From the IMG/VR virus record IMGVR_UViG_3300023199_000204, positions 1 to 64,000 of that record: a stretch of 64,000 nucleotides of DNA; one strand, given 5' to 3'. The notes under the pieces were generated by a model. That model saw nothing but the letters and a program-made list of their open reading frames with translations, searched no databases and was not told the origin of the DNA. Each line of letters starts with the position of its first letter. Positions within the stretch are counted from its first letter, which is position 1. Below are positions 23,090 through 50,896 of this stretch, piece after piece. The position numbers were made by a program, and so were the translations under genes.

Positions 23090-24421
23090 GTGAAAAAGAA
23101 ATATTTGAGCGAATATGATAAAATAAATTGTTGGGATTATGATAAAAACAAAAATTTAGATCCTAGTAAATTAACTTACGGGAGCCATAAGTTAGCGTGG
23201 TGGAAATGTAATAAATGTGACCAATCTTATAAAAAATCTATTAAAGAACAATTAAAACACAAATTATGTCCGTTTTGTTCTAATAAAAAAGTATATGAAG
23301 GCAATTGCCTTTTAAATTTATATCCAGAAATATCAAAAGAGTGGGATTATAATAAAAATGATTTAAAACCAAATAATGTAGTTTCTGGAAGTAATAGAAA
23401 AGTATGGTGGAAGTGTAGTAAATGTAATCAAGAGTGGGAAGCACCTATTTTTAAAAGAACTCTTTATAATTATGGATGCCCATACTGTTCAAATAGAAAA
23501 GTCTCTAAAAAAAATTGCTTATCTAGCACTAACCCAGAATTATTAAAAGAGTGGTGGTATGAAAAAAATATTATTAAGCCACATAATATAACAGCAGGCA
23601 GTGGAAAAAAAGTTTGGTGGAAGTGCTTAAATTGTAAAGAAAAATATAAAATAATTATACATAGAAAAGTAAGCGGAAGAGGTTGCCCATATTGCATAAA
23701 TATAAAAATTTCTAAAAAAAATTGTTTATCAGCAACACATCCCGAAATAGCAAGTGAATGGAATTATGATAAAAACCGTTTAACACCAGATGATGTAGTT
23801 TCAGGAAGCAACAAAAAAGTATGGTGGAAATGTAATAAGTGTAATCAAGAATGGAGCACTAAAATTCAACATAGGACATTATCTAACAGCAACTGTCCTT
23901 TTTGTAGCAACCAGAAAGTATATAATGGAAACTGTTTAGAGACTTTATATCCTGATGTAGCAAAAGAATGGAATTATAATAAAAATGATTTAACACCAAA
24001 AGATGTAGTTTATGGTAGCAATAAGAAAGTATGGTGGATATGTAAAAATAGCCACGAATGGAAAACTGATGTCTATAGTAGAACTATTAGCAAAACATTA
24101 TGTAAAAAATGTAGTAATAATGTTTCAAAGACATCTCAAAAATGGTTAAATAAAATGGAAGAAATATATGGAAAAATTGAAAGAGAATTTCCTATAAAAA
24201 CAAAAAAAAGAGTTTATAATGTTGATGGGTTTTCAAAAAAGCATAATATAATATTTTCTTACCACGGAAATTATTGGCACGGAAACCCAGAAATATATGA
24301 TTTAAATGAGTATAATAATGTAGCTAAAAAGACTTTTAGAGAGTTATATTTAGATACTTTAATTAGAGCACAATATTTAAAAGCTGAAGGGTATTGTGTT
24401 ATTGAAAAATGGGGTAAATAA
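23090..24421 (+). CDS. Zinc-ribbon-repeat (DUF4379-like) protein with a Vsr-like nuclease C-terminus
   Basis: Five EW.Y.KN..GS.KKVWWKC..C..CPxC repeats; VDGF..YHGNYWHGNP. Confidence 0.8.
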   Translation: MKKKYLSEYDKINCWDYDKNKNLDPSKLTYGSHKLAWWKCNKCDQSYKKSIKEQLKHKLCPFCSNKKVYEGNCLLNLYPEISKEWDYNKNDLKPNNVVSGSNRKVWWKCSKCNQEWEAPIFKRTLYNYGCPYCSNRKVSKKNCLSSTNPELLKEWWYEKNIIKPHNITAGSGKKVWWKCLNCKEKYKIIIHRKVSGRGCPYCINIKISKKNCLSATHPEIASEWNYDKNRLTPDDVVSGSNKKVWWKCNKCNQEWSTKIQHRTLSNSNCPFCSNQKVYNGNCLETLYPDVAKEWNYNKNDLTPKDVVYGSNKKVWWICKNSHEWKTDVYSRTISKTLCKKCSNNVSKTSQKWLNKMEEIYGKIEREFPIKTKKRVYNVDGFSKKHNIIFSYHGNYWHGNPEIYDLNEYNNVAKKTFRELYLDTLIRAQYLKAEGYCVIEKWGK

Positions 24422-28172: not shown

Positions 28173-29324
28173 ATGTCAACACTTAAACTAACAATTACTG
28201 TATCAGATATAAGTGATGTAATTTCTTTATATGATAAGATACAAATTCAAAGGTCTGAATCGGGCCCACCATATTCAGATGCTGTTGATATAACATCTTC
28301 TGCTTCTACTTCCGCAACTCTTTCCAGTGAGTTAAATGGCCCATATAATATAAACGGGCAAACTTTATCTTTTAAAATAAATGGAGGCAACACTCAAACT
28401 TTAACCTTTACTTCATCAAACCCTGTTTCATCTACAGCGGCTGCTTCTGAATTTACGACATTTGCCTCTGGAGCCACAGCTTCTGGAGCACTTGGAAACT
28501 TTATTATGACAACTGCTTTGACTGGAACTGGTTCTTCTATAGAAGTAATAGGAGGAACTGCTTTAACTGAATTAGGATTTGATGCCGGAGATAAAGATAC
28601 GGGTGAAAACTCTGAAATAACTTTAGTTGCGAACACTTCAACTTATGAGTTCACTGACAGCAGTGGAAGTGAAAATTACTATTATAGAACAAGATACTAC
28701 AACTCTTCAACAGATGCTGTTAGCTGTTATTCTGATTGGATTCAAGGTGCTGACATAAGTGCTGATTTAGAAATTGGTGACGCTCCAATATACGCCTGGA
28801 CTCAAGATGAAATATGTGGAATTAATATATTGCTGAAACAGTTAAAAGCCAGACTAAAAAGTGATGGATTGGCAGAAACTATTGATGAGTATGGAAACAT
28901 AGAATTATCAAATTGTCCAATATTTACAGATGATGAATTAGTATGTTTCTTACAAAACAGTTTAAGTGAGTTTAATCAAACGCCACATTTTACTAGTTTT
29001 ACGTTTGCGGACCAGGTTATTTATGACAGATATGCTCATATTATTGTAGAAGGTGCTTTTATATTAGCAACAGGGGCACAAATGTTAATTGAAGCGGGAA
29101 GAGAGTTTACAATTACAGATAATGGAATTACTATGAATCCGCCACCATTATCTAATGTTCTAAATAATCAACTTGGACATTTTGTTACAAGGCACACACA
29201 AGCTTTAGAAAAGATTAAATGGAGTATTAAACCAAAACCAACGGGATTTGGAAGCTTCAGGGTACTTGCTTCAAATCCAAATTATCTTCGTCTACGGCAC
29301 CTAAGGCAAAGGAGAATTATATAG
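28173..29324 (+). CDS. Neck/head-tail adaptor protein with N-terminal Ig-like extension
   Basis: C-terminal FTDDEL..FL..SLSEFN.TP..IIVEGA..LIEAGREF.ITDNGI helical connector-like domain; synteny. Confidence 0.55.
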   Translation: MSTLKLTITVSDISDVISLYDKIQIQRSESGPPYSDAVDITSSASTSATLSSELNGPYNINGQTLSFKINGGNTQTLTFTSSNPVSSTAAASEFTTFASGATASGALGNFIMTTALTGTGSSIEVIGGTALTELGFDAGDKDTGENSEITLVANTSTYEFTDSSGSENYYYRTRYYNSSTDAVSCYSDWIQGADISADLEIGDAPIYAWTQDEICGINILLKQLKARLKSDGLAETIDEYGNIELSNCPIFTDDELVCFLQNSLSEFNQTPHFTSFTFADQVIYDRYAHIIVEGAFILATGAQMLIEAGREFTITDNGITMNPPPLSNVLNNQLGHFVTRHTQALEKIKWSIKPKPTGFGSFRVLASNPNYLRLRHLRQRRII

Positions 29325-30439
29325 TGAAAGAAGAGTGTCCAGTTTGCGGTAGAAAAAGTAAAACAAAAACAGGTGTAAGTAGTCATTTATTCAAATGTAA
29401 AGATGAAAAACATATAAATTATATAGAAAATATGAATAAAACTATAATAAATAATTTTTCTATAATGAAATCTCCATATGAATTAGATGTATATTGTTCT
29501 CCATATTATATTAGGAAGATATGGGATACAATTCCAGAAAATAAAGATAGAAAAAAATTAGCTAACTCTACATCTTTAAAAAAGCAGTGGAAAAAAGGAA
29601 CAAGGACTGTTCCAAAGGGATTAACTAATAAAAATTATAAATATAGTTTAAATCACAAACATACTATTAGTGAAACAGCCAAAAATACTATAATAGAATT
29701 ATTTAATTCCAATCTTACATCAAAAGAAATTTCTATTAAAGCCAGTTGTGATGTTAAAACTGTTATTCCTGTTTTTAGAAGATATTTTAGTGACGAAGAG
29801 GTAGATGAACGAATTAAGAGAATTTTAAAATTAGCAAGCATTAAATCTGGAGTGTCAAATAGTTTAAAGGTAAAGTTCCCTGAAAAATACAAAAATATTG
29901 TAAAAGAATTTAATGATACTAATGGGTTAAAAACAATAGCAGAAAAATATAAAACGGGAACAGGGGCAGTTAAGAAGATATGGATAGAAAAATTTGGAAA
30001 AAAGGCATATGAAGGCCGTCTTGCTATGATGTTAAAATTACAAAAAGAGAGGGCAGGGAAATCTCTTAAAAAGGCAAAATTCTTAGGTTCTAAAAATGAA
30101 AGACTATGTTATAGTCTTTTAAAAGAGAGTATAGAGTATAATGTAAAACATCACGATTATAGTGTAGTTCCCAGATTAGAAATAGATATAACAATTCCTG
30201 ATCTTAAAATCGCCATTTGTTGGGATGGAATAGGGCATAGGAAACCGGTTTTTGGGAAAAAGCCTTATAATAAAGTAGTTAAAAATGATAAAATAAGAAA
30301 ATTAATACTTGATAGAAAAAAATGGACACATATTTCTGTTGTTGATAATGGAAGTCATAACAAGGAATTTGTTAAAGAAAAAGTCAAAGATATTATAAAA
30401 ATTATAAATGATGGAAATCAACAGTATATTGAAATATAG
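29324..30439 (+). CDS. HTH plus DUF559/Vsr-like endonuclease (putative homing endonuclease)
   Basis: SKNE..EIDITIPDLKIAICWDGIGH..D; N-terminal CxxC..H. Confidence 0.7.
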   Translation: MKEECPVCGRKSKTKTGVSSHLFKCKDEKHINYIENMNKTIINNFSIMKSPYELDVYCSPYYIRKIWDTIPENKDRKKLANSTSLKKQWKKGTRTVPKGLTNKNYKYSLNHKHTISETAKNTIIELFNSNLTSKEISIKASCDVKTVIPVFRRYFSDEEVDERIKRILKLASIKSGVSNSLKVKFPEKYKNIVKEFNDTNGLKTIAEKYKTGTGAVKKIWIEKFGKKAYEGRLAMMLKLQKERAGKSLKKAKFLGSKNERLCYSLLKESIEYNVKHHDYSVVPRLEIDITIPDLKIAICWDGIGHRKPVFGKKPYNKVVKNDKIRKLILDRKKWTHISVVDNGSHNKEFVKEKVKDIIKIINDGNQQYIEI

Positions 30440-30794: not shown

Positions 30795-31754
30795 AAAAGA
30801 GAAAGAGTTTATAGAATTGTTTTATAGTAATATGTCTTTAAAAGATATGGAAAACACATATGGAGTTGACCAAAGGAAAATTAGAGGAATTTGGAGACAA
30901 AAATTCGGAAACGAGATGGTTAAAAATCGTGGCAAAAGTATAACTTCTAATAAAGTTAAGAATAGTAAAGAATTAAATAATGATATTATAAATAATATAT
31001 ACTTCCTTTCCGAAAAGCATAGTACAAAAGAGGTTGCTAAAAAACTTAATATATCCAAAAGTGTTGTTAATAAATATTTATCTAAAAATAAAAAAGTATT
31101 ATATAAAATTAAAGAGAGAAATATAGAGAACTCTCGTGTTAGAATGAAAGAGCTGAGGAAAAACAGTGTTAAACAACCTAAAACGCTAAGTGAAGGGAAA
31201 ATTGAATCCATAATTAAAGAGTTTAGTTCAAATTTACTGCTTATTGATATATCAAGAAAAAAATAATGTTTGTGTGAGCACAGTTTGTAATATATTTATT
31301 AATAAATATGGAAAAGATGCTCATATGGCGAGGGTAAAAAGATTAAAAGATATAAGAATTAAAAGAATTTTTAAGGCATTGGAGAAGGCAGGAAAGCTTG
31401 GTTCTAAACCAGAAAGAGAGTTTTATAAAAAAATAAATAGTAAACTTAATATTAATGTAAAACATCACGATTATGATTTAATACCTCCTTTTGAAATAGA
31501 TATTACAATTCCAAAATATAAAATTGCTATATTTTGGGATGGAATAGGACACTATAAACCTATTTTTGGTGAAAATATATTTAAGCAAGTTGTATATAGA
31601 GATAAATTTAAAAGAAAAAAAACTTAAAACATTGGGGTGGGGATACTTTTAAGTAAAAGATTTAAATAATAAAGTTAAAGAAGCATTTTTAAACAAACAA
31701 TTTAATAATTTACTTAAAAAATTTCCTATATTAAAAAATGAACTATCAGGTTAA
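30784..31754 (+). pseudogene. Disrupted paralog of the 29324 endonuclease
   Basis: Shares GSK.E, NVKHHDY and EIDITIP..KIAI.WDGIGH.KP.FG. +1 at A7 31257-31263, +1 at A8 31615-31622 and in-frame TAA at 31650. Confidence 0.75.
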
Positions 31755-32217
31755 AGCAAAGCAAAGGCGATTAATTCAAAAACTAAAGATGGCTCTAAAA
31801 AAAGAAAAAGAGTTTATAGAAAAATGCGAAAAATATGATCGTAGACCAAATTTTATAGATGATGTTAAAGTTTCGTTTCAGCCTTTGGACGTATCAGCGA
31901 AAACAATTAATGGAGAGATAATTTTAAATGAGAGCCTTTTAGAAAAAGACTGGGTAGAGCAAATGAGGTATTTGTTACACGAATCTACCCACGTTTTACA
32001 ACAAGAAGCGGGACAAGTTAATGGAAAGGTTGATAAAGATAATTATCTTGATGACGAAAATGAACAAGAAGCTTTTCAAGCACAAATTTCTTTTCAAAAT
32101 AAACATGAAGGACCTGAAGAGGTTCAAGAATATATAGAAAACTTATTAGATCATCACGACATAAAAGGAAAGGAGAGAAAAGAGAAAGAAAAAATGCTAA
32201 CTGAAGAAGTTAAGTAA
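31738..32217 (+). CDS. Zincin-like (HExxH) putative metallopeptidase
   Basis: LLHESTHVLQ plus downstream E.EAF. Confidence 0.55.
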   Translation: MNYQVKAKQRRLIQKLKMALKKEKEFIEKCEKYDRRPNFIDDVKVSFQPLDVSAKTINGEIILNESLLEKDWVEQMRYLLHESTHVLQQEAGQVNGKVDKDNYLDDENEQEAFQAQISFQNKHEGPEEVQEYIENLLDHHDIKGKERKEKEKMLTEEVK

Positions 32218-32228
32218 AATGGAGTAAA

Positions 32229-34241
32229 ATGGCACAATTTACCAATTTTTTTCCTACATTTGGGCAAACAGATATTCCTAAAACAACAACAGTTAGTTAT
32301 ACCATATTAACTGATGGCTACGATGGTGCTCAAATTGGAACACTTTCTACTATAATAGATGGCTATCAGGTAATAGAAAATGGAGCATTTGTTAATGGAT
32401 ATTCTGGGAATATATTTTCTAGTACTGGAAAATATGTTGTTGGAGTTTATCCAAAATCTCCTGATTTTCTAGGCGGAGCAAAGGCAATAAGTGTTGAACT
32501 AGAAGTTCTTGACTCGTATGGAAGTCTTGATGCCTATAGCTATACCTTTTATACAGCTGGATATGGAGTTGCTGAAGAGGTGGTGGAGAGCCCTCCTTTA
32601 ACAAACAGAGCTTGCCAGTATAAACCATTTTTTCCTTCTACAGATTTAGGATTGGTTGCCGCTTTAGATTCCGGAATAGGAACAGAGGTGGAACTAACCT
32701 GGAAACAAGCACATCCTTATGATGAAGATAATGTAGTTTACTATAATATAAGATTCAATACAGATAGATCGTTGGTTTTAAATAGTGATCCAATATTTAT
32801 TGTTTCTGATGTGGAAGCAACTATTGCTGGTTTATGTCCTGGAGATACGAATTATTTTAACTTAAAAGCAGTAGAGTTTGATCCTACATTACTTACAACT
32901 GATGGTATGACTCAGGGCGGAACAAATATGTTCTTTTACCCTGAAAGTGTGGTCGATTTAGAAGTTGCCATTGATGATTTATTGATTCCAGGATCTACGG
33001 ATGGATTTCCTGATTATGGAATTCTGGATATTGGAACAGAGCTTATTAGATATGTTTCTAAATCTGTAATTCCAGAAGGATTTGTTATATCCTCAAATGG
33101 AAGGGGCTATGGAGATACATTAGCTGAAGAACACTCAGAAAATGATCAAATTAAGTTATATTTTGGAATAGAGGACGGCAATACAATTGTGGTACAAGCC
33201 ACTCCAACTTTTACAAAGCCAAACGATCAAGTAACTTGGGTTAAAATTGATGGTTATGGAAATGATGGATATAGAGATGGTTATGATGGATATGATAAAG
33301 TTTATTCTGGTGGACCCAATGCCTATAGATTATTTGATGGATATGATGGATATTATAGGTATAGACAAGAAGAGTTTGATAATATAACAACAGATGGGAC
33401 CAATAATGATTCTTTAGGAGATTTTAAAAGATTTGATTATTGTGGCACTTATAGAAGATTATCTCCGGCAAGTTTTATGCAGGGTCAGTGTTCTGGGTCA
33501 TATTGGGGCGGAGTTCAGTTGAAAAATGGTAATAGGGTAAGAGTTCCTGATTTAACCACTCATATATTACAGAGAGAGGAGCTTCTTCTTGAGACTACAG
33601 GAGAGCCTTTTATTTTATTAAGAAGAATGTGGACAGGAATAAGATGTGCTTGTATGATGAGTAGAAGAGAGCATTCAGACGCAAGGTGCTCGATCTGCTA
33701 TGGCACAGGTTTTGTTCAAGGGTATACGCAATTCTTTAACCCAAGAAGACCAGATAGAAGAATTCTTGTAAGCATAGATCCTGCGACAGATGATGTACAA
33801 ATAGTGGATAGAGGTGGTTTGGAGCCAGTATACGAGCCAGATGGCTGGACACTACCATTTCCATCGATAAAAGACAGAGATGTTGTAATTAGGTTTAATG
33901 AGAATGGAACTGTTGAATATAGATATGAAGTTCTTAATGTAACTAGAGTTAGAAATGTTTTTAGTACCTCTGGTGCTCAAAAGATAAAATTTAAAAGATT
34001 TCCTGTTACAGATATAATATATCAATTCCCTATAGTTGGAGACACTTCTCCAGCACCAGAGGGTTTAACTACCTCTACTAATATTGCTCCAGGTTTACCT
34101 GCTCATAGTCACGATATTATTATACCTAATGGAGCAGATATAAATACTATAAGAATAGCAACATTGCTTTCTGAAGGGCACAACCATACAATTATCAATG
34201 GAGTTGTTATGCCTGTTCTAGGGCACACTCATACGATATAA
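32229..34241 (+). CDS. Neck/head-closure-like protein with FN3/Ig-like N-terminus, a DGY cluster and a His-rich tail
   Basis: TGEP..LLRR.WTG.RC.C...C..CYGTG and WTL..P.IKDRD..RYEV..VTR (stopper-like); VELTW..YYNI..YFNLKAV (FN3-like); HSH/HNH/HTH tail. Confidence 0.55.
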   Translation: MAQFTNFFPTFGQTDIPKTTTVSYTILTDGYDGAQIGTLSTIIDGYQVIENGAFVNGYSGNIFSSTGKYVVGVYPKSPDFLGGAKAISVELEVLDSYGSLDAYSYTFYTAGYGVAEEVVESPPLTNRACQYKPFFPSTDLGLVAALDSGIGTEVELTWKQAHPYDEDNVVYYNIRFNTDRSLVLNSDPIFIVSDVEATIAGLCPGDTNYFNLKAVEFDPTLLTTDGMTQGGTNMFFYPESVVDLEVAIDDLLIPGSTDGFPDYGILDIGTELIRYVSKSVIPEGFVISSNGRGYGDTLAEEHSENDQIKLYFGIEDGNTIVVQATPTFTKPNDQVTWVKIDGYGNDGYRDGYDGYDKVYSGGPNAYRLFDGYDGYYRYRQEEFDNITTDGTNNDSLGDFKRFDYCGTYRRLSPASFMQGQCSGSYWGGVQLKNGNRVRVPDLTTHILQREELLLETTGEPFILLRRMWTGIRCACMMSRREHSDARCSICYGTGFVQGYTQFFNPRRPDRRILVSIDPATDDVQIVDRGGLEPVYEPDGWTLPFPSIKDRDVVIRFNENGTVEYRYEVLNVTRVRNVFSTSGAQKIKFKRFPVTDIIYQFPIVGDTSPAPEGLTTSTNIAPGLPAHSHDIIIPNGADINTIRIATLLSEGHNHTIINGVVMPVLGHTHTI

Positions 34242-34250
34242 AGGAAGAAA

Positions 34251-35303
34251 ATGAAAAGAACAAGTAAAGAAATAGAAAACAAAGTAGTTGAGATGTACAA
34301 AAGTGGTTTATCTTATAGAAAAATTTCAGAAATAACTGATATTAAATTACACGTAATAAGAAAAATAGTAAAACAAAGTGATACTATTGTATCTACACCA
34401 GGATTTAAAAAAAAATATAATTATGATGAAATCATAAATATTTATAAAAATGGAAAGACAATTAAAGAAGTATCGATTGCTACTGGGGCGTCATTCTCGT
34501 GTGTAACAAATATACTAAAATCTAAAAATGTGCCGTTACGCAGGAAAGTTAATTTTAATAAAGATGATATTGTAAATTTATATTTATCTGGGCATAGTAT
34601 AAAATTTATTTCTCAAAAATTAAAATTACCTAAAACTAATATAGCACGTAGAGTAAAAAGATATGGAATAAGTAGGTCAATTTCACAGGCGAAAAGAAAT
34701 GAGCAAATTAATCATAAATGTTTCAAAGAATACAATATTAACTCTGCTTACTGGGCTGGATTTTTAGCGGCAGATGGTAGCATTAGAAAGAAAGGGGGAG
34801 TTAGACTAGCACTTCAAAAACGCGATATTGGACATCTTAAAAAATTTGGTGAATTTATTAATTATAATAAAATTAAATTATACAGTAATACCCCCGAGAT
34901 TGTTTTTGGCTCAAAAGAAATAGAAAAAGATTTAGAGTTTAACTTTAACATAATAAATAATAAAGTTTATATTTTAAATCCCCCTTCACAAATTAATAAA
35001 AATTTTATTTCTCATTTCATAAGGGGCTATTTGGACGGAGATGGGTGTATTCACAAGACAAAGTGTAAAATAAGTTTCGCTGGAACATATATGATGCTTT
35101 GTTGGATAAAAGAAAATATTAAACTATTTGTGGAAGAAGCTAAAAACCCAAGTGTTTTGCCTCAAAAGCAATCTAAATATACTTATACATTGACTTTTAA
35201 TGGTAAGATTCAATCTAGAAAAATAGTTAAGTGGTTATATGAAGGTTCTACAGAAAACACAAGGTTAGATAGAAAATACGAGATAGCAAAAAATTATATG
35301 TGA
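34251..35303 (+). CDS. LAGLIDADG homing endonuclease with three HTH repeats
   Basis: YWAGFLAADG, FIRGYLDGDG and LDRK motifs. Confidence 0.9.
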   Translation: MKRTSKEIENKVVEMYKSGLSYRKISEITDIKLHVIRKIVKQSDTIVSTPGFKKKYNYDEIINIYKNGKTIKEVSIATGASFSCVTNILKSKNVPLRRKVNFNKDDIVNLYLSGHSIKFISQKLKLPKTNIARRVKRYGISRSISQAKRNEQINHKCFKEYNINSAYWAGFLAADGSIRKKGGVRLALQKRDIGHLKKFGEFINYNKIKLYSNTPEIVFGSKEIEKDLEFNFNIINNKVYILNPPSQINKNFISHFIRGYLDGDGCIHKTKCKISFAGTYMMLCWIKENIKLFVEEAKNPSVLPQKQSKYTYTLTFNGKIQSRKIVKWLYEGSTENTRLDRKYEIAKNYM

Positions 35304-35307
35304 TTTA

Positions 35308-36082
35308 ATGAATATATTTCAAATGATAGGGTTAGAGAGAACTGGGACAAATTATTTACAATGGCTAATTGTAAATAATTTTAAAGACTGTATTATAATA
35401 GCGATAGGGAAGCATTCAGCACGCATGCCAACTCATTTAAGCCTTGGTGAAAAAGAGTTTATTGATTTTTTTCAATATAGAATATAAAAGTTATGCTTCA
35501 TATTTACATTGTAGTAAAAATATTAAAGACCCTGGTATATTAAAGAACGGAATTATTAAAATTCCAAGTAAATTTATTATATCAAGTTTAAAAGAAAATA
35601 GAAATAATATTAATTATATTATAAATGTTAGAGAGCCCATTGCTTGTGCATTGGGAATGAATAATGCTTAGAAATATAGAAAAATAATAGATAATATAAA
35701 ATCTTGGAATAAATTCTATTCAAAATGGCATATAATGATGAAAGACGCGGATAATTCGATATTTATAAAAAATGAAGATTGTATGCGTGATTATAAAAAA
35801 GAACTTATGAAAATAAAAGAAAAGTTCAATCTTGAAGTAATTAATAATGATTTTATTACGACTGATAAGGTTATAAACTTCTCTATGAGAGAAACTTCTT
35901 ACGAGAGTTGTAAAAAGGCGGCAGAGGGAAATAATTCAATTTATTCATTTAAGCCTCACACCAATGGTTTTGATAATAATTATTTTTTAGATAAAAAATA
36001 TTTAGCTAGGCTAAAAGAAAAAGAAATTAAAGAATTAGAAAATCTTATTAATAAAGAAGTTAAGAATATTTTTAAATACTAA
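35308..36082 (+). pseudogene. Sulfotransferase-like gene disrupted by +1 (T7 35466-35472) and in-frame TAG (35669)
   Basis: ATG 35308 reads MNIFQMIGLERTGTNYLQWLIVNNF (5'-PSB-like loop); later YIINVREP (3'-PB-like) and IFIKNED; the pieces join into one ~258-codon frame. Confidence 0.6.
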
Positions 36083-44097: not shown

Positions 44098-45090
44098 GTG
44101 ATAGAATGTAATAGATGCCGTAGAAATAGAAAACACAAAGCAAAAGGAATGTGTCTTTCTTGTTATTCTGGATCTTTATATAAAAAAATAATTTGCTCAA
44201 ATTGTAAAAATAAAAGAAGACAGTTTAGAAAAAGTTCTTCATTGTGCTCTAAATGTTTTAAACACTTATCTAAATTTAAATGTAAAAATTGTAATAGCAA
44301 AATACATTTTGAAAATGGATTTTGTAAATTTTGTTACATACCTCCAGAGAAAACTTGTAATAGTTGCTATAAAGTCGGTATTCTTAAATCTAATTTATGC
44401 TCTAAATGTTATAATAAAAAATATTATTCTAAAAATATTGGAAAATGCGAAATATGTAAAAAAGAAAAAAACATATTTAACCATAGTGGTAAATATATAT
44501 GTTCAAAATGTAATCATAGGAATATAAGAACTATATCTATTTGTAAAATATGTTCAAAAGAGAAGGTTATATATAAAGACGACAAGTGTAAATATTGTTG
44601 CGTGAAGGTTGGGAAATGTAAAAAATGTAATATAATAAGAAAATTATTTTATGATAATAAAACAGTATGTAGATTATGTTATTATCCTCCTAAAAGAGAA
44701 TGTTATTTTTGTAATAAATATGGAATAATATCAAAAATAAAAGATGGCAAATATATGTGTAATAAATGCTATAATTCTCAACCAGAAAGAATAGCTATTT
44801 TACAAAATAACAGAGCAAGTAGGGGAAATATTTCAGGAAGTGAGTGGTTATATATAATGAATTCTACAAATTGGAAATGTTTTTATTGTGAGCAAAAGTT
44901 GAACAAGAATAATAGAACTGTTGATCATATTATTCCTATAATAAAAGGCGGTTCTAATAGTATAGATAACTTAGTTCCTTCTTGTAATATATGTAATTCA
45001 AGCAAGAACGCCCAAAATGTATTTAAATGGCTTAAAATAAAAAATATTGAATTGACGGAAGAAAAATTAAAAACCCTTGGAGTTAAGTAA
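44098..45090 (+). CDS. Cys-rich HNH endonuclease
   Basis: Many CxxC pairs; CFYC..TVDHIIP..GG....NLVPSC..CN.SK. Confidence 0.85.
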   Translation: MIECNRCRRNRKHKAKGMCLSCYSGSLYKKIICSNCKNKRRQFRKSSSLCSKCFKHLSKFKCKNCNSKIHFENGFCKFCYIPPEKTCNSCYKVGILKSNLCSKCYNKKYYSKNIGKCEICKKEKNIFNHSGKYICSKCNHRNIRTISICKICSKEKVIYKDDKCKYCCVKVGKCKKCNIIRKLFYDNKTVCRLCYYPPKRECYFCNKYGIISKIKDGKYMCNKCYNSQPERIAILQNNRASRGNISGSEWLYIMNSTNWKCFYCEQKLNKNNRTVDHIIPIIKGGSNSIDNLVPSCNICNSSKNAQNVFKWLKIKNIELTEEKLKTLGVK

Positions 45091-45872
45091 TGAGTACATC
45101 GCACAGAGTATATAGTGATCTTTTTCAAGAAGCTAATTTTGTAAATCAGACGGCTGTATCTCAAGGGAAAAATTTACTTATAGATGTTATTAGAGAATCG
45201 TTTAAAAAAGATACATTTTATCGCTATACTCACGACGCCTTTGGTTTCCCTTTAACACCGGATTTAACAGCTCTTCCTCCAGATATTCAAGAGGAAAGAA
45301 CAACAAGAATATATATAGGAGATGTATATCGTTATGATAAAAGATTTAATCCTTCAATAACAGTTAGACATTCTTCGGGAAAATATAAGCCAATATCTAT
45401 TAATCAAAATCATACCACTAAATATAGATTGGATTTGGTAATTGATGGATATGGAAATAGATCATATATTAGGGTTCCGACACATAGGGTCATTACTGGA
45501 GCTTGGGAACAAACATTTGAAGTTAAAATAACTTCAGAAAGCACACAGGACCGCGAAGAATTGACGGATATTGTGACAGGGTATTTACAAGGTGTTGTTC
45601 GTCAAGAACTGTATGAGGCTGGACTTTTTGTTAGAGGAGTGAGTATGAGTTCTGAAACTGAAGAAGATTGGGCTAATGATAAGTTATATATACAGAGTAG
45701 TAGTCTGGAAACATATTCAGAATGGCGTAGGCACCTTCCAATAAATAGTGTAATTGAAACACTTAATTTTTGTTTTAACTATGGTATTTTAGGAAGTGGC
45801 AACTTTGCTTTAGACAGTATTATGGTTCATACTGAAGATAATACAATCAGTTATGAAGTTCCAGTCACTTAA
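45090..45872 (+). CDS. Tail completion/terminator-like protein
   Basis: Position before the sheath; P.ITV..GAW...FEV.I.SES..DREEL.D.V pattern. Confidence 0.5.
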   Translation: MSTSHRVYSDLFQEANFVNQTAVSQGKNLLIDVIRESFKKDTFYRYTHDAFGFPLTPDLTALPPDIQEERTTRIYIGDVYRYDKRFNPSITVRHSSGKYKPISINQNHTTKYRLDLVIDGYGNRSYIRVPTHRVITGAWEQTFEVKITSESTQDREELTDIVTGYLQGVVRQELYEAGLFVRGVSMSSETEEDWANDKLYIQSSSLETYSEWRRHLPINSVIETLNFCFNYGILGSGNFALDSIMVHTEDNTISYEVPVT

Positions 45873-46458: not shown

Positions 46459-46550
46459 AATGATGCTAAAAATTTTCAATAAAGTCTTGAAATCATATGT
46501 TTTAAGCTATTGTGGGCATCGTCAAATATATATATTTTGGAGGATTTCAA

Positions 46551-49094
46551 ATGCCTAATATTCCTGGAGTACAAGGTCCATTAATACCATCTGTAGTGAC
46601 GAGGGTAAGGGTAAGATCAAGGGCTCTATCAATTCCTGGGGGATTGAGAGTTTTATGTTTAGTTGGCGAAGGTCGTCGCGAGGAGGTTCTTGTAGATTCT
46701 GCTCAAGGGGGCGGTGCCGATGGATTTGTGCCAGATTTTTCTCAATTAGCCACTGATGGTTATGGAAGATTTTTCCGTCTGGCAAACACCAGCATAGTTT
46801 CAAACAGAACATCTCTTTTATTAAACGGATCAGAATTAAGACTTTTAGAAGAAGCTCTTGATGGAAACAGCTTCTCATCAAGTTATGACGCAAGAATTGA
46901 TATTTCTACAGGTCAAATAGAGCTTCAAAGTGCTTCTATTGTTGATCAGGGCGGAATATTATATTCAGAAAGCTCAGGAAACACCGGTGATGGTTATTTA
47001 TCAGCAATAAATCTTACAGATTCTAATGCTCCTGCGGAAACTTGGACAATTAGGTGTACTAGTGTTTTAAAAGACAGTTATGGTGCTCCTATAAGAGAGC
47101 AAGCTACATTTATAGCCTCAGGTTCAGTTAGCGGACAATTAGTAGACTCATATGGTCAGCCATTTACTTGGAAAAGTGATGGAGCCGCCGTAGATAATGG
47201 AATTTTGTCTTTTGCTATATATAATCCTTCTCCTAGTCAGCCTCACGATGTAGGCGACAGATACTCTATTCAGGTTTCTAGTAAGGTGTTACAGGAAAGA
47301 GATACTTTAGAAGCCAGATATATTGCTGAAGCAGATTTGCTTGATCCTCAAACATTTACAGAGCCAGAAAAACTTTATATTAAGCACGGACAGCCCGATT
47401 TGGAAAATACATTATCTTTTGCCGCGCAATTGGCTTTTGAAAATGGAGCAACAAGTGTTCTGGCTGTTCAGGCGAAACCAGCATTGCCAAGAAGAACTAG
47501 TGAAATTGTTCTTCCTGCTCAAAATTCACTAACAGGCGAAACTGGTGCTGATGGTGGTTCTGATCCAGATGATTTAATTTTTCCAATCACTGCTCCAGGA
47601 AAACCAGGAGCTGATTCAGAAGTTCATTTCTTTATTATAAATGCTGATGGGTCAGAGGACCAAATATTCCCTAATAAAGTTTCATTTTATGATCCTGATA
47701 TTACGACCGCATTTTCCACTTATGAAGATACTGGCGTAAGTGCTGATTTACTAACTGAATTTATGGCTCCAGGCTCAAGTGGAACTCCATATAGCTATAC
47801 TGTTGTAAGTGATGATAAAATTGAAGATACTGGAATTGATGGGTATATTTCACCAATTGGTGTTGGCTCAACAGCATTTTTTACAGCCTCTTCTGCCTCA
47901 TTTACAAGTGAAGCAGTAACTGATGGAAAATATATTGATGTCGTAAATACTGGAACTGCTAATCTTGGCAGATGGGAAATTACAGAGGTTGTAAGTGCCA
48001 CAACTGTAAGAATTTCAAGAGATTCTGGATTTTTTGCTACCGAAACAGATTTAAAATGGCAGCTATTACTTCCTGGAGAATCATCTTATAGAGTTTTATT
48101 TACAACTGATTTAGCTTTAGCTTCGGGCAAAGGTTTAAGAGTTAGTTATATAGATGAGAAAGATGAAGACTTTTTTGATGCTAACTGGGCAGTGGCTCTT
48201 GATACTTTAGAGACTCAAGATTTACAGATTCTTGGTCTATATCCTAGTCAAACATTTTCAGCAATTCAGCAGGCTGGTCGTGTCCACGTGGAGAGAATGT
48301 CTTCAACATTCTATAAGAGAGAGCGTGTGCTCTTCACAGGTGCTTTGGATGGTTTAACGACTGATAATGTGCTCGGCGTATCCAACGCGGCTGTAGAGAA
48401 TATAGGAATTCTTGAGGGCATTCAGGGTGATTCTGCCGAAGAGATATTAGATGGAAATATCGAAGATTTGACAGATTACAGTGTTGTAAATAGCTTTGGA
48501 GACAGCTTTAGAGTTGCGTATTTCTATCCAGATCAAGCTATTAGGGTTGTTAATGGAACAGCAACCACAATTCCAGGGTATTGGATTTCAGCCGCTGCGG
48601 CAGGAAGAATGTCAGGAGAGCCTAATATTGCTCAGCCTCTAACAAATAAGGTATTATCTGGAATAACAATTCTAAACAGTCGTCAATATAAAGAAACCGT
48701 TCTTGCTTCTCTTGGAGATGATGGAATTATTGTATGTCAGCCAGTTACAGGCGGCGTGAGAGTTATTCACGGAATTACAACTTCTCAAAGTGGAAACCCA
48801 GAAGATGAAGAACTATCAATCGTGTTCATTCGTGATCATATCGCGAGAACTATGAGAGATACATTTAGAGAGTTTATCGGGCAACCAGAAGATCCTACAC
48901 TAATTCCTTCTTTAACTGCCAAAGCAATTTCGCTACTTAATGCTTTTGTCTCTCAAAACTTGATTACTGCTTATAGAAACCTATCTGTATCCAGAGATGA
49001 TGTAGAGCCAAGACAATACAATATCGTGGTTGAAGTCCAACCTAACTATCCAGTTAACTGGATATTCTGTGATGTGAGCGTAGGACTCTTTTAA
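46551..49094 (+). CDS. Contractile tail sheath protein
   Basis: Start at ATG 46551 (GGAGG). H...MS....ER, AAA.AG......PLTNK, GITT....ELS...IRD and PNYPVNWI...V sheath C-terminal motifs. Confidence 0.9.
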   Translation: MPNIPGVQGPLIPSVVTRVRVRSRALSIPGGLRVLCLVGEGRREEVLVDSAQGGGADGFVPDFSQLATDGYGRFFRLANTSIVSNRTSLLLNGSELRLLEEALDGNSFSSSYDARIDISTGQIELQSASIVDQGGILYSESSGNTGDGYLSAINLTDSNAPAETWTIRCTSVLKDSYGAPIREQATFIASGSVSGQLVDSYGQPFTWKSDGAAVDNGILSFAIYNPSPSQPHDVGDRYSIQVSSKVLQERDTLEARYIAEADLLDPQTFTEPEKLYIKHGQPDLENTLSFAAQLAFENGATSVLAVQAKPALPRRTSEIVLPAQNSLTGETGADGGSDPDDLIFPITAPGKPGADSEVHFFIINADGSEDQIFPNKVSFYDPDITTAFSTYEDTGVSADLLTEFMAPGSSGTPYSYTVVSDDKIEDTGIDGYISPIGVGSTAFFTASSASFTSEAVTDGKYIDVVNTGTANLGRWEITEVVSATTVRISRDSGFFATETDLKWQLLLPGESSYRVLFTTDLALASGKGLRVSYIDEKDEDFFDANWAVALDTLETQDLQILGLYPSQTFSAIQQAGRVHVERMSSTFYKRERVLFTGALDGLTTDNVLGVSNAAVENIGILEGIQGDSAEEILDGNIEDLTDYSVVNSFGDSFRVAYFYPDQAIRVVNGTATTIPGYWISAAAAGRMSGEPNIAQPLTNKVLSGITILNSRQYKETVLASLGDDGIIVCQPVTGGVRVIHGITTSQSGNPEDEELSIVFIRDHIARTMRDTFREFIGQPEDPTLIPSLTAKAISLLNAFVSQNLITAYRNLSVSRDDVEPRQYNIVVEVQPNYPVNWIFCDVSVGLF

Positions 49095-49113: not shown

Positions 49114-50100
49114 ATGAAATTAGATGAAGAAATAACTGAAAGACACACTGCTAAGGAAAAAATTAATTATGGATTAATATTTGAGGAATATTTAAATGGA
49201 AAAACTGCTAATTTCTTAATTAATAAATATAATATTTCAAGAAAACAATTTTTTAAAAAATCAAAAGAATTTAATATAAAAAAACAAACCAAACTGCGTT
49301 CAGAATTATTTTTAGAGAATACTGCTGAGACTTATTATTGGGCAGGATTTATAGCTGCCGATGGCAATATAAGCAAATGTGGAAAAAGAATATCTATACA
49401 ATTAAAACTAGATGATTTATCACATTTGCAGAAATTAAGTCTTTGGTCTGGGGCAAAAACTTTATATTTTAGAGAGACTATAAAAAATAACAAAATTATT
49501 AAATCCTGTTGTTTAAACTTAAATTCAAAATCAGCAGTTACGGCAATATTTAAGTTAAATATAATTCCTAATAAAACAAGAATATTACTTCCCCCTCCTA
49601 AAACCATATATAGTTGGCATTATATTAGAGGGTATTTTGATGGAGACGGTTCAATAAGTTGGCATAAGTCAAATAATAAAGCAAGAATTTATTTAGCATC
49701 AGGTTCTTTAAAGTTATTAAAATGGATAAAAAATAAAATATCTTTTATCGAAGGAGTTGGTAATCCAAAAATTACTTATAAACTTGATAAAAACTCAAAT
49801 AATAAAACATATTGTCTAGAATATATGGGTTTTCAAACAATTAATATACTTAACAAGATATATGAAAATTCTAATAAAACAATAAGGCTTGATAGAAAAT
49901 ATAATAGATTTATTGATTATAAACAAAGAATGTTAAACCAGATTAGGAATAAAGAAGAAAAAGATAATAAAATTTTAATTCGTAATATGGAAATTGTTAA
50001 TTTATATAATTCTTTAAATATAAAAATGAAGGATTTGGCGGACAGATTTAATTTATCGCGAGCATCTATAAGCAATATAATAGCAAAAAATGAAGCGTAA
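49114..50100 (+). CDS. LAGLIDADG homing endonuclease
   Basis: YWAGFIAADG, YIRGYFDGDG and LDRK motifs. Confidence 0.9.
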   Translation: MKLDEEITERHTAKEKINYGLIFEEYLNGKTANFLINKYNISRKQFFKKSKEFNIKKQTKLRSELFLENTAETYYWAGFIAADGNISKCGKRISIQLKLDDLSHLQKLSLWSGAKTLYFRETIKNNKIIKSCCLNLNSKSAVTAIFKLNIIPNKTRILLPPPKTIYSWHYIRGYFDGDGSISWHKSNNKARIYLASGSLKLLKWIKNKISFIEGVGNPKITYKLDKNSNNKTYCLEYMGFQTINILNKIYENSNKTIRLDRKYNRFIDYKQRMLNQIRNKEEKDNKILIRNMEIVNLYNSLNIKMKDLADRFNLSRASISNIIAKNEA

Positions 50101-50896
50101 ATCACCAGGTTGTAAAGGCTTTGATTTAAATTACGAAGCTATTTCCAAAGAGTATTTGAGCGGAGGTAGTTTAAAAGATTTGGCAGAAAAATATAATGTA
50201 TCTAAATGGACGTTATTGGATAATTTTAAGAAACTTGGAGTTAGAAAAAATACTAAAAGATATTTAGATAAAACGAAGTTTGATACTTATACACCAGAAA
50301 GCTGTTATTGGGCAGGTTTTATAGGGGCAGACGGGTGGATAAATAACAATGGATATTTGGGTATTGAAATAAAACAAACAGATAAAAACCATTTAGAGAA
50401 AATTAAAAGATTTTTGAGTAGCAATGCTGATATAAATTTTAGAGAAAGGAATAAATTTAGTTCTGTTCAAAAATCAGCGTATATTCAGTTTAATTCAAGA
50501 TATTTAATAAACAGTCTAGAATATAACTTTAATATAATCCCAAAAAAATCATTAATACTTCAACCTCCAAATATACCAGAAAATATGATAAGACATTATA
50601 TTAGGGGCTATTTTGATGGTGATGGCTCTCTAGGGTGGCACAAACACAATAAAAATCCTAGAGTTACAATATGTTCAGGTTCAATTAAGTTTTTAAAAAC
50701 GATATTTAATGAAATAAAACGTAATATTAACTCAACAGGAAATCCTAAAATTATAAAGCGAAGGCATTCTAACACTTGTACGGTAGAATTTATGGGTAAG
50801 CAGTGTTATGATATTCTTGATTGGTTATATGAGGATGCTGAATATTATTTAGATAGGAAATATAAAAGGTATTTAAAATATAAATCCAAAAGGTGA
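50090..50896 (+). CDS. LAGLIDADG homing endonuclease
   Basis: YWAGFIGADG, YIRGYFDGDG and LDRK motifs. Confidence 0.9.
   Translation: MKRKSPGCKGFDLNYEAISKEYLSGGSLKDLAEKYNVSKWTLLDNFKKLGVRKNTKRYLDKTKFDTYTPESCYWAGFIGADGWINNNGYLGIEIKQTDKNHLEKIKRFLSSNADINFRERNKFSSVQKSAYIQFNSRYLINSLEYNFNIIPKKSLILQPPNIPENMIRHYIRGYFDGDGSLGWHKHNKNPRVTICSGSIKFLKTIFNEIKRNINSTGNPKIIKRRHSNTCTVEFMGKQCYDILDWLYEDAEYYLDRKYKRYLKYKSKR

What the first reader, a model, noticed from the sequence alone, without database searches (positions are those of the whole stretch)
33249..33356. Dense DGY array inserted in the neck protein
KIDGYGNDGYRDGYDGYDKVYSGGPNAYRLFDGYDGYY holds six DGY in about 36 residues, as a low-complexity linker between the FN3/Ig-like region and the stopper-like domain. 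It looks like a deliberately multiplied modification or docking site at the neck, analogous to a mucin-like linker.
Basis: partly seen in the sequence, partly recalled or inferred. Interest (0 to 1): 0.7.

Follow-up and report, generated by a model that had tools for sequence, protein, structure and literature searches.

The report
Conserved DGY array in phage neck stopper
A huge phage's neck "stopper" protein carries a real, strongly conserved run of Asp-Gly-Tyr units, and the same tripeptide is about 12 times over-used across the tail and neck proteins of this uncultured phage group; its function is still unknown.

Summary
Window 33249-33356 encodes residues 341-376 of a 670-aa protein (32229-34241, +) and holds six DGY; no shuffle comes close.

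- The N-terminal part is Ig/FN3-like.
- Residues 437-603 are a phage neck stopper barrel (phage 812 stopper, Z 10), with an invariant four-cysteine loop.

The "mucin-like low-complexity linker" reading is not supported. Among 78 orthologues of 45-62% identity, the four-unit core DGYGxDGYRDGYDGY is one of the most conserved stretches of the protein. Only the part behind it gains and loses units: 2-8 in the array region of the 88 orthologues read there, and one in a distant subfamily.

DGY is also specifically over-used (O/E about 12, rank 2 of all tripeptides) in the virion-module proteins next to the stopper in 66 related loci. This holds whether or not their stopper has the array. It is not seen in T4 or Bacillus phage G. 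Other DGY arrays sit in unrelated virion-module proteins of relatives.

Best reading, inferred and not shown: a structured Tyr/Asp connector or clasp, amplified from one ancestral DGY turn. A modification site or a metal-binding site is not excluded. Structure and complex predictions gave no answer.

The parts
32229..34241 (+). Neck stopper (head-closure) gene, 670 aa, carrying the array
   Evidence: ORF. No Pfam family; weak phrog_38102 'virion structural protein'. 187 metagenomic homologues. Fold matches below.
32229..32558 (+). Ig-like domain 1 (aa 1-110), with two further DGY at aa 29-31 and 44-46 in loops or turns
   Evidence: AF2 pLDDT 83-93, all-beta. Ig/FN3 tandem matches in the PDB. 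This domain is absent from the ~530-aa subfamily, whose matches start at aa 124-151.
32634..33218 (+). FN3/Ig-like domains 2-3 (aa 136-330)
   Evidence: AF2 pLDDT mostly 83-94. Foldseek FN3/Ig tandems. One orthologue carries PF00041 fn3 (P0085).
33249..33293 (+). DGY array, conserved core (aa 341-355): DGY-G-x-DGY-R-DGY-DGY
   Evidence: Mean top-residue frequency 0.91 across 79 rows (the query and 78 orthologues); rank 6 of 656 windows; R349 99%. Synonymous codon variation. AF2 pLDDT below 50.
33294..33335 (+). Variable insert of the array (aa 356-369)
   Evidence: Present in about a quarter of orthologues (gap fraction 0.5-0.76). The long/short state needs at least 9 changes on the tree, at least 5 of them forced by well-supported branches.
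33336..33356 (+). Distal DGY-DGY-Y (aa 370-376); DGY 373-375 is the ancestral anchor
   Evidence: G374 and Y375 invariant and D373 at least 90% across both subfamilies. It is the single DGY at this position in the ~530-aa subfamily. DGY+R/K/H is seen at the same place in more distant representatives.
33357..33536 (+). N-arm between the array and the barrel (aa 377-436), with conserved TTD, ND, DYCG and GQC motifs
   Evidence: Conservation 0.71. AF2 confidence is low to moderate. By analogy it corresponds to the N-terminal arm of the 812 stopper, which is ordered only in the virion (PMC12886913).
33537..34037 (+). Stopper beta-barrel domain (aa 437-603)
   Evidence: VIA-align Z 10.0 to the phage 812 neck chain 8q01_S, and Z 8-9.8 to chains of the FCWL1, Pam3, phiCD508, GTA, R4C, Chi and XM1 neck/connector entries. 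Foldseek probability 1.00 to the same set, including 8qgr 'stopper protein of phage 812'.
33645..33698 (+). Tetra-cysteine loop C473-x-C475...C487-x-x-C490
   Evidence: All four Cys are invariant in 44 sequences. [quoted passage not shown] AF2 pLDDT below 50 without metal.
34038..34238 (+). C-terminal beta domain (aa 604-670) with three invariant HxH motifs
   Evidence: H626/H628, H651/H653 and H666/H668 invariant. AF2 pLDDT 82-89.
31738..32217 (+). 159-aa HExxH protein immediately upstream, a conserved partner gene of the stopper
   Evidence: Sub-threshold PF13699 eCIS_core (20.8 bits, cut-off 22). A homologue was found in 69 of 80 related loci; in the seven listed with a position it lies 400-490 nt upstream of the stopper.
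34251..35303 (+). Free-standing homing endonuclease gene directly downstream
   Evidence: phrog_4645 endonuclease, E 2.7e-50.
35308..36082 (+). Sulfotransferase-like gene in three pieces: a frame change in a T7 run at 35465-35471 and an in-frame TAG at 35669-35671
   Evidence: ESM Atlas: the third piece matches sulfotransferase clusters (score 0.94; TM 0.57-0.64). No Pfam hit. Same breaks in a 97%-related contig. TAG is an ordinary stop here and there is no suppressor tRNA. No homologue in four related genomes or in phage G.

Best explanation
The gene encodes the neck stopper of an uncultured huge myophage whose major capsid protein is 53% identical to that of Bacillus phage G. Its parts, in order:
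- Three Ig/FN3-like domains, which should sit on the outside of the neck as a built-in collar or decoration.
- The DGY array.
- A roughly 60-residue arm.
- The stopper beta-barrel with a four-cysteine (probably zinc) loop.
- A small His-rich C-terminal domain.

The array is not a floppy spacer. It is a tandem amplification of one ancient DGY+basic turn of the stopper's N-terminal arm. It forms a fixed four-unit Tyr/Asp/Gly/Arg core plus a labile tail of one to four more units.

Most likely it is a compact, assembly-ordered connector or clasp. The Asp-Gly turns would present a row of tyrosines, with one invariant arginine, that pack against a neighbouring neck subunit, possibly bridged by cations, and so fasten the outer collar to the stopper ring. 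DGY appears to be this phage group's general punctuation motif (a turn or cap with a tyrosine staple) in virion surface domains.

Shown: the anatomy, conservation, evolution and specificity of the motif.
Inferred: that it is ordered in the virion, what it contacts, and any role of metal.
For: - Stopper identity and position. Fold matches reach Z 10 and probability 1.00. The gene lies between the major head protein (11791-12822) and the tail sheath (46512-49094).
- Precedent in phage 812. The stopper's termini are ordered only in the virion, where they hold separate decoration proteins and reach towards the adaptor. Here the decoration-like domains are fused to the stopper.
- Constraint. Core conservation is 0.91 against 0.65 for the protein and 0.78 for the barrel, rank 6 of 656 windows, with Arg 99% conserved.
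- Selection acts on the protein. Codons vary synonymously, all 16 codon combinations occur, and the DNA pattern is in frame 0 in 1278 cases against 35 and 7 in the other frames.
- Ancestral anchor. G374 and Y375 are invariant across subfamilies down to about 36% identity, and DGY+R/K/H sits at the same place in more distant representatives.
- Structural context elsewhere. In the confident part of the model, DGY 44-46 lies at a two-residue hairpin turn with Tyr opening the next strand. In a relative's 692-aa protein, 20 repeat units each end in ...LKDLDGY.
Against: - AF2 gives pLDDT below 50 for the array, both in the whole protein and in the C-terminal half. The ESM Atlas model of the protein is poor too (pTM 0.31, mean pLDDT 0.57).
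- The co-fold of two stopper copies, Ca and the upstream 383-aa protein gave 'no answer' (score 0.00). No partner is identified and no order is demonstrated.
- A simple turn motif does not explain the near-absolute specificity. NGY, EGY, DGF, DAY and DSY are all at 0.7-1.3 times expectation, against 11.8 for DGY.
- It also does not explain why whole arrays appear in unrelated virion-module proteins of relatives.
- The distal part of the array changes length often, as linkers do.
Confidence: 0.4

Rival explanations
1. DGY is a three-residue acceptor site for a covalent modification of virion proteins (tyrosine sulfation, phosphorylation, nucleotidylation or glycosylation), and the neck array is a multiplied acceptor patch.
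For: - Sequon-like statistics: specificity at all three positions with almost no flanking consensus (755 distinct 15-mers of 792).
- Enrichment confined to the virion module of the genome.
- Many sites turn over between orthologues while density is kept: 70 distinct columns in one family, with 37% of sites in columns shared by at most 10% of sequences.
- Arrays recur in unrelated virion-module proteins.
- Acidic and turn residues beside Tyr fit the known rules for tyrosine sulfation (my own knowledge). The only PDB sequence hit is the sulfated CDR-H3 of antibody PG9, which is weak (E 0.04).
- A sulfotransferase-like gene lies 1 kb downstream.
Against: - That gene is broken by a frame change and an in-frame TAG, and the phage has no suppressor tRNA.
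- It has no Pfam match.
- It has no homologue in four related genomes, two of them rated complete, although those genomes' stopper neighbourhoods show the DGY enrichment.
- No clade-wide enzyme was identified.
- Many DGY sites are positionally conserved, like structural residues.
- The invariant Arg and Gly of the core suggest a fold.
Confidence: 0.17
2. DGY is a metal claw. Asp carboxylate and Tyr phenolate, two residues apart, point the same way, as the two His of an HxH motif do. Three units would give six oxygen ligands for a hard cation (Fe3+ or Ca2+). The array would then be a metal-stapled knot, and single DGYs in trimeric fibres would form axial sites.
For: - Strict need for Asp (not Asn or Glu) and Tyr (not Phe).
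- Units come in threes or more in the conserved core and in other arrays.
- The same protein has a four-cysteine loop and three invariant HxH motifs, so metal sites are already part of its design.
- AF2 also fails on the Cys loop, which in phage 812 is ordered by zinc.
- Asp/Tyr ligation of Fe3+ in transferrins and ferric-binding proteins is established knowledge (recalled, not tested here).
Against: - There is no direct evidence. Adding Ca to the co-fold gave nothing usable.
- The pattern matches no known Ca motif: only one partial RTX-like nonapeptide, and no Pfam calcium-binding family.
- An invariant Arg inside a cation site is unusual.
- D-x-Y with any residue other than Gly is not enriched, which a pure ligand-geometry argument does not predict.
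Confidence: 0.15
3. It is a sticky recognition surface. Tyr/Asp/Gly loops, like antibody CDR-H3 loops or low-complexity aromatic-rich kinked segments, bind host-envelope glycans or other phage fibres. This would be docking of whiskers or fibres at the neck, or weak adhesion to the host.
For: - The composition mimics Tyr/Gly/Asp-rich antibody binding loops, though the profile hit to PG9 CDR-H3 is weak.
- DGY is concentrated in large proteins of the virion module (two of them, 866 and 1513 aa, lie just downstream and are unidentified) and in the part of the sheath protein outside its family match.
- Those two proteins could be neck or tail fibres needing an attachment point (inference).
Against: - Host-binding surfaces usually evolve fast, whereas the core is nearly invariant.
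- The neck is far from the host surface during adsorption.
- No partner was identified.
Confidence: 0.1
4. It is only a flexible low-complexity spacer of no specific function. It arose by slippage and is tolerated between two domains (the mucin-like linker in its neutral form).
For: - AF2 confidence is low.
- The distal part changes length often: at least 9 long/short changes and at least 23 changes of DGY count on a 79-row tree.
- It lies at a domain boundary.
Against: - The core is one of the most conserved parts of the protein, across orthologues that share only 45-62% identity with the query.
- The residues are held by purifying selection with synonymous change.
- Spacers are not Tyr-rich and do not keep an invariant Arg.
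Confidence: 0.06

Closest known systems
Stopper protein gp97 of Staphylococcus phage 812 (Herelleviridae), PDB 8q01/8qkh/8qgr
   Same: Best structural match for the barrel (Z 10.0; Foldseek probability 1.00). Both have a four-cysteine loop, C-x-C...C-x-x-C, which binds zinc in 812, plus an extra beta domain. In 812 the termini are ordered only in the virion, where they hold neck decorations.
   Different: gp97 is about 230-270 aa with no Ig/FN3 domains. Its decorations are separate proteins (gp164, gp56). It has no DGY array. There is no detectable sequence similarity (no PDB sequence hit to it). The 812 paper states that the Cys pattern is not conserved outside Herelleviridae; here it is invariant in an unrelated group.
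gp175 of Bacillus phage G, the nearest cultured relative by capsid protein
   Same: It matches the stopper barrel of the profile (E 1.4e-13). It lies three genes upstream of the tail sheath gene and has a four-cysteine pattern. The major capsid proteins are 53% identical.
   Different: It has only 283 aa, too short to hold three N-terminal domains (its N-terminal part was not examined), and one DGY with no array. The phage G tail module shows no DGY enrichment (3 observed, 2.15 expected).
Small stoppers/head-closure proteins (SPP1 gp16 / lambda gpFII / HK97 gp10 type; PBSX XkdH 3f3b, GTA 6tba, Pam3 8hdr)
   Same: Same barrel fold, Z 7-9.
   Different: They are about 100-130 aa with the barrel only: no arm, array, Cys loop or Ig domains.
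Mucin-like or PT/ST linkers and O-glycosylated C-terminal tails of mycobacteriophage virion proteins
   Same: A repetitive segment at a domain boundary of a virion protein; the idea of multiplied acceptor sites.
   Different: Those are Ser/Thr/Pro-rich, fast-evolving and accompanied by glycosyltransferase genes (my own knowledge). This array has no Ser/Thr/Pro in its core, is highly conserved, and has no identified enzyme.
HxH metal-binding motifs of phage fibres and spikes (T4 gp37 and gp12, P2 gpV)
   Same: A short motif with two ligand-capable residues two apart, recurring in virion proteins. This protein also has three invariant HxH.
   Different: The ligand chemistry would be oxygen, not nitrogen. 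No metal binding by DGY is known or shown. Recalled from memory, not tested.

Membership tests
Phage neck stopper / head-closure protein | Stopper beta-barrel fold | tested here: met
   aa 437-603: VIA-align Z 10.0 (812), 9.8 (FCWL1), 8.8 (Pam3), 8.7 (phiCD508), 8.2 (GTA, R4C). Tube/Hcp proteins reach only Z about 5. Foldseek top hits are all neck entries.
Phage neck stopper / head-closure protein | Gene placed between head and tail genes of a tailed phage | tested here: met
   Major head protein at 11791-12822 and tail sheath at 46512-49094, all on the + strand. Same neighbourhood in relatives.
Phage neck stopper / head-closure protein | Forms a hexameric or dodecameric ring under the adaptor and gates the channel | not testable with these tools
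   The size limit of the complex tool precludes a ring. The one co-fold run gave 'no answer'.
812-type stopper with tetra-cysteine zinc loop | Cys-x-Cys-(X)n-Cys-x-x-Cys in a loop of the barrel, binding Zn | tested here: inconclusive
   The sequence pattern is present and invariant (C473, C475, C487, C490); the 812 pattern is given. Zinc binding was not tested, and the middle residue is Ala, not Pro.
Mucin-like / low-complexity modification linker | Only composition conserved; sequence and length evolve fast | tested here: not met
   Core 341-355 conservation is 0.91, rank 6 of 656. Only the distal third is labile.
Mucin-like / low-complexity modification linker | Ser/Thr/Pro-rich acceptor residues | tested here: not met
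   Composition of the 36-mer: G 9, Y 9, D 7, with one S, one P and no T.
Mucin-like / low-complexity modification linker | A cognate modifying enzyme encoded by the phage group | tested here: inconclusive
   There is a sulfotransferase-like gene at 35308-36082, but it is broken and absent from four related genomes. Other enzyme classes were not searched.
RTX / beta-roll calcium-binding repeats (GGxGxDxUx) | Several tandem nonapeptides matching the consensus | tested here: not met
   By eye, only aa 341-349 resemble one nonapeptide. Position 5 is Pro in most orthologues. The next nine residues do not fit. No Pfam hit at E up to 1.
Collagen-like Gly-X-Y triple helix | Gly at every third residue over a long run | tested here: not met
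   Gly spacing in the core is 2, 3, 4, 3, read directly from the sequence. The longest in-register stretch is two triplets.
Tyrosine-sulfation site (TPST / RaxST type) | Tyr with nearby acidic and turn-forming residues, and a sulfotransferase acting on it | tested here: inconclusive
   The sequence context fits (from the sequence; rules recalled from memory). The enzyme evidence is weak, as above. Sulfation itself cannot be tested here.

The most novel reading that the evidence does not exclude
DGY is a three-residue code used across the virion surface of a whole clade of uncultured huge phages. It would mark sites for a covalent tyrosine or aspartate modification, or for chelation of a hard metal ion. 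The stopper's array, and the independent arrays in fibre, beta-helix and small virion-module proteins of relatives, would be multiplied copies of that site. No such virion-wide tripeptide motif has been described for phages, to my knowledge.
Probability: 0.25. Interest if true: 0.85.

Novelty: new variant of a known kind. Interest (0 to 1): 0.62.

Why it matters
The neck of huge phages is almost unexplored, and no cultured phage in the collection searched matched this stopper by direct comparison; only a profile search found a distant homologue in Bacillus phage G.

The work gives three things:
- It identifies the stopper of a large metagenomic phage group and shows that the 812-type four-cysteine loop is not confined to Herelleviridae.
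- It shows a stopper with the decoration domains fused on.
- It shows that a bare tripeptide, exact at all three positions, is used about 12 times more often than composition predicts in the virion-module proteins flanking the stopper gene in this group, and not in T4 or phage G.

A motif this specific, with so little context, normally means a defined chemistry: a modification, a metal site or a very particular fold element. Whichever it is, it would be a new design rule for virion proteins and a handle for recognising virion genes in metagenomes. If it is only a favoured turn, the finding is a modest curiosity about one protein family.

Tried and rejected
- Pfam on the whole protein: nothing at E up to 1. 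tblastn of the protein against 50,697 phage records: no match.
- AF2 on the full length and on the C-terminal half: the array stays below pLDDT 50.
- Co-fold of two stopper copies (aa 335-603), four Ca ions and the upstream 383-aa protein (a guessed adaptor): score 0.00, 'no answer'. This counts neither for nor against.
- ESM Atlas on aa 326-436: best score 0.74, uninformative.
- PDB sequence search: only a compositional hit to the PG9 CDR-H3 (E 0.04). I treated it as chance and used it only as an analogy.
- Literature searches for DGY repeats and for phage sulfotransferases or tyrosine sulfation: nothing relevant.
- Sulfation lead. Motifs I recognised by eye in 35308-36082 were backed by the Atlas. 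They were not backed by Pfam. The gene is broken, TAG is not recoded, and it is missing from four relatives. I rejected it as the explanation of a clade-wide motif.
- DNA-level explanation (a binding or methylation site GAYGGNTAY): rejected. The pattern is almost only in coding frame 0 and on the coding strand, with all synonymous codons used.
- 'DGY is general to myophage virion proteins': rejected by T4 (5 observed, 2.5 expected) and phage G (3 observed, 2.15 expected).
- RTX and collagen readings: rejected on register (see the membership tests).
- PHROG searches of other DGY-array proteins and of the neighbouring neck genes: no named function.
Full report
**The observation.** ORF 32229..34241 (+) encodes a 670-aa protein. 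Window 33249-33356 is its residues 341-376 and holds six DGY in 36 residues. The whole protein has eight. In 20,000 shuffles of the protein, no 38-residue window held more than two DGY. In 200,000 shuffles of the segment's own composition, none reached six. The DNA has only a weak 9-base periodicity.

**What the protein is.** Pfam finds nothing, and PHROGs gives only a weak 'virion structural protein'. The genome is a 316-kb, 32% GC virus record with nearly all genes on one strand. The gene lies between the major head protein (11791-12822) and the tail sheath (46512-49094).
- AF2 with a 44-sequence alignment models residues 1-110 and about 140-330 confidently as beta domains. These match Ig/FN3 tandems.
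- A separate model of residues 322-670 matches neck stoppers over residues 437-603. Phage 812 gives Z 10.0. The FCWL1, Pam3, phiCD508, GTA, R4C, Chi and XM1 neck entries give Z 8-9.8. XkdH, phiKZ and T4 gp13/gp14 give Z 7-7.4, and tube/Hcp proteins only about 5.
- Four cysteines (C473, C475, C487, C490) are invariant. They reproduce the Cys-x-Cys...Cys-x-x-Cys zinc loop described for the 812 stopper, whose authors report that it is not conserved outside Herelleviridae.
- Three HxH motifs in the C-terminal domain are also invariant.

**The array in relatives.** The protein has 187 metagenomic homologues, many on contigs of 300-460 kb, and 93 loci in IMG/VR.
- In the roughly 660-aa family (45-62% identity), the region reads DGY-G-x-DGY-R-DGY-DGY, then a variable stretch, then DGY.
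- DGY counts in the array region, read in 88 of the 120 listed homologues, are 2 to 8, with a mode of 5.
- The roughly 530-aa subfamily (about 36% identity) lacks the first Ig domain. It has a single DGY at the anchor position and a DGYDGY doublet elsewhere, after a conserved His.
- More distant representatives again show one to four DGY, usually as DGY+R, at the same place before the barrel.
- Across 79 rows (the query and 78 orthologues) the core 341-355 has a mean top-residue frequency of 0.91. The whole protein has 0.65 and the stopper barrel 0.78. The core ranks 6th of 656 fifteen-residue windows, and Arg349 is 99% conserved.
- Orthologues use different synonymous codons for the same residues.
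- The 14-residue insert with an extra DGY, which the window's protein has, is present in about a quarter of the family.
- On a tree built without the array columns, the long/short state needs at least 9 changes (5 forced by well-supported branches). The DGY count needs at least 23.

So there is a fixed core and a labile tail. This is not the behaviour of a mucin-like linker.

**DGY elsewhere.** In this genome, long ORFs other than the stopper hold 52 DGY against 12.7 expected. These are concentrated at 25-100 kb, the virion module, where O/E is 7-11. Across most of the rest of the genome O/E is about 0-2.

I pooled the 10-kb flanks of the stopper gene in 66 related loci, with the stoppers themselves excluded.
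- There are 793 DGY against 67 expected (O/E 11.8), the second most over-represented of all tripeptides.
- The specificity holds at each position. Every D-x-Y with another residue, every x-G-Y and every D-G-x lies at 0.4-2.5. This includes NGY 0.70, EGY 0.74, DGF 0.93 and the permutations at about 1.
- There is almost no flanking consensus: 755 distinct 15-mers among 792.
- The DNA pattern GAYGGNTAY is in coding frame 0 in 1278 cases, against 35 and 7 in the other frames. All 16 codon combinations are used, so the selection acts on the protein.
- The enrichment is the same whether the locus's stopper has the array (O/E 13.2, 7 loci) or not (12.0, 59 loci). Array size therefore does not track DGY use.
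- It is not a general property of myophage virions. T4 structural proteins have 5 against 2.5 expected.
- Bacillus phage G has a capsid protein 53% identical. Its tail module has 3 against 2.15 expected, and its 283-aa stopper gp175 has one DGY and no array.
- Within orthologous families some DGY sites are positionally conserved, for example 45 of 60, 43 of 52 and 22 of 24 sequences. Many others are lineage-specific.
- Thirteen further distinct arrays of three to six DGY occur in relatives. They sit in small 117-150-aa proteins, in two large (about 1600-1700-aa) proteins I take to be fibres, in a 421-aa protein, and in a loop of a 1023-aa protein I read as a beta-helix from its sequence (it had no family match). 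One 692-aa protein has 20 repeats that each end in DGY.

**Attempts to see the array's structure or partner.**
- AF2 leaves residues 342-387 below pLDDT 50 in both models.
- A co-fold of two stopper copies, calcium and the upstream 383-aa protein gave 'no answer'.
- The Atlas look-alike search on the segment was uninformative.

**The modification lead.** One kilobase downstream, after a homing endonuclease gene, window 35308-36082 reads as a sulfotransferase-like gene in three pieces. There is a frame change in a T7 run, then an in-frame TAG.
- The Atlas places the last piece among sulfotransferases (score 0.94; TM 0.57-0.64).
- Pfam does not match it.
- The genome has 32 tRNAs but no suppressor, and TAG ends 28 of 192 long ORFs, so the stop is real.
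- The same breaks occur in a 97%-related contig.
- No homologue exists in four related genomes, two of them rated complete, or in phage G.

This gene cannot explain a clade-wide motif. No other candidate enzyme was found, and other enzyme classes were not searched.

**Interpretation.** In phage 812 the stopper's termini become ordered only in the virion. There they hold separate decoration proteins and reach towards the adaptor. Here Ig/FN3 domains are fused to the stopper through the array and a 60-residue arm.

The array grew from one ancient, invariant DGY+basic turn of that arm. Its core is under stronger constraint than the barrel, and it keeps an invariant Arg. I therefore favour a structured, assembly-ordered Tyr/Asp clasp that ties the outer collar to the stopper ring (confidence 0.4).

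A plain turn motif leaves two things unexplained: the exactness of the tripeptide, and the recurrence of whole arrays in unrelated virion-module proteins. Those two facts keep a modification site (0.17), a metal claw analogous to HxH (0.15) and a sticky recognition surface (0.10) alive. A neutral spacer is largely excluded (0.06).

**Novelty.** The protein is a new variant of a known kind, a stopper with fused decoration domains, an 812-like Cys loop and a DGY array. I found no description of the clade-wide DGY bias. It is the part most worth following up.

Noticed in passing
window 33645-33698 (aa 473-490): An invariant C-x-C...C-x-x-C loop sits in the stopper barrel, matching the zinc-binding tetra-cysteine loop of the phage 812 stopper. 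The 812 paper reports that pattern as not conserved outside Herelleviridae. Phage G gp175 has a C-x-x-C...C-x-x-C version.
   Followed up: partly
relatives P0011, P0024, P0025, P0029, P0043, P0066, P0072 (about 1080 aa); insertion point corresponds to window aa 490: Several orthologous stoppers carry an intein (Hint plus LAGLIDADG domains). In all seven aligned the break maps to aa 490-494. In the one read residue by residue (P0011) it lies exactly before the fourth cysteine of the tetra-cysteine loop, so the zinc-ligand Cys is also the +1 splice nucleophile. The window's own gene has no intein but has a free-standing homing endonuclease gene directly downstream (34251-35303).
   Followed up: partly
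window 35308-36082: A sulfotransferase-like gene split into three pieces by a frame change in a T7 run (35465-35471) and an in-frame TAG (35669-35671). The breaks are identical in a 97%-related contig (L002). Probably a pseudogene. It is absent from four related genomes.
   Followed up: yes
window 31738-32217: A 159-aa protein with an HExxH motif (sub-threshold match to PF13699 eCIS_core / DUF4157) has a homologue in 69 of 80 related loci; in the seven listed with a position it lies 400-490 nt upstream of the stopper. It appears to form a tight gene pair with the stopper. It could be the adaptor or a neck-associated metallopeptidase-like protein.
   Followed up: partly
window 34038-34238 (aa 604-670): Three invariant HxH motifs (H626/628, H651/653, H666/668) lie in a confidently modelled small beta domain at the C-terminus of the stopper. 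They resemble the metal-binding HxH motifs of phage fibres and spikes.
   Followed up: no
L066:210-2288 and L065:12486-15557: A 692-aa protein in a relative is built of 20 repeats that each end in ...LKDLDGY. By eye it looks like a segmented coiled coil. A 1023-aa protein in another relative, which I read as a beta-helix from its sequence, carries its own six-unit DGY array in a loop beginning with a Cys.
   Followed up: partly
~530-aa stopper subfamily (e.g. L011-L081): These stoppers lack the array core. Many of them instead carry a DGYDGY doublet three to four residues after the invariant His that corresponds to H302 of the window's protein, i.e. in a different domain.
   Followed up: no
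window 15838-18351, 23090-24421, 29324-30439, 34251-35303, 44098-45090, 49114-50100, 50090-50896: The virion module is crowded with homing endonuclease genes (HNH, LAGLIDADG and others) placed between the structural genes.
   Followed up: no
whole record G000 (316,473 bases): The major capsid protein is 53% identical to that of Bacillus phage G. There are 32 tRNA genes, all beyond 163 kb. CheckV rates this 316-kb record as only 18% complete, which looks odd.
   Followed up: no
window 28173-29324 and 45090-45872: The 383-aa protein upstream and the 260-aa protein just before the sheath are conserved neighbours of the stopper. Each has one positionally conserved DGY (43 of 52 and 22 of 24 orthologues). 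They are candidates for adaptor and tail terminator, but no family or fold evidence was obtained.
   Followed up: partly
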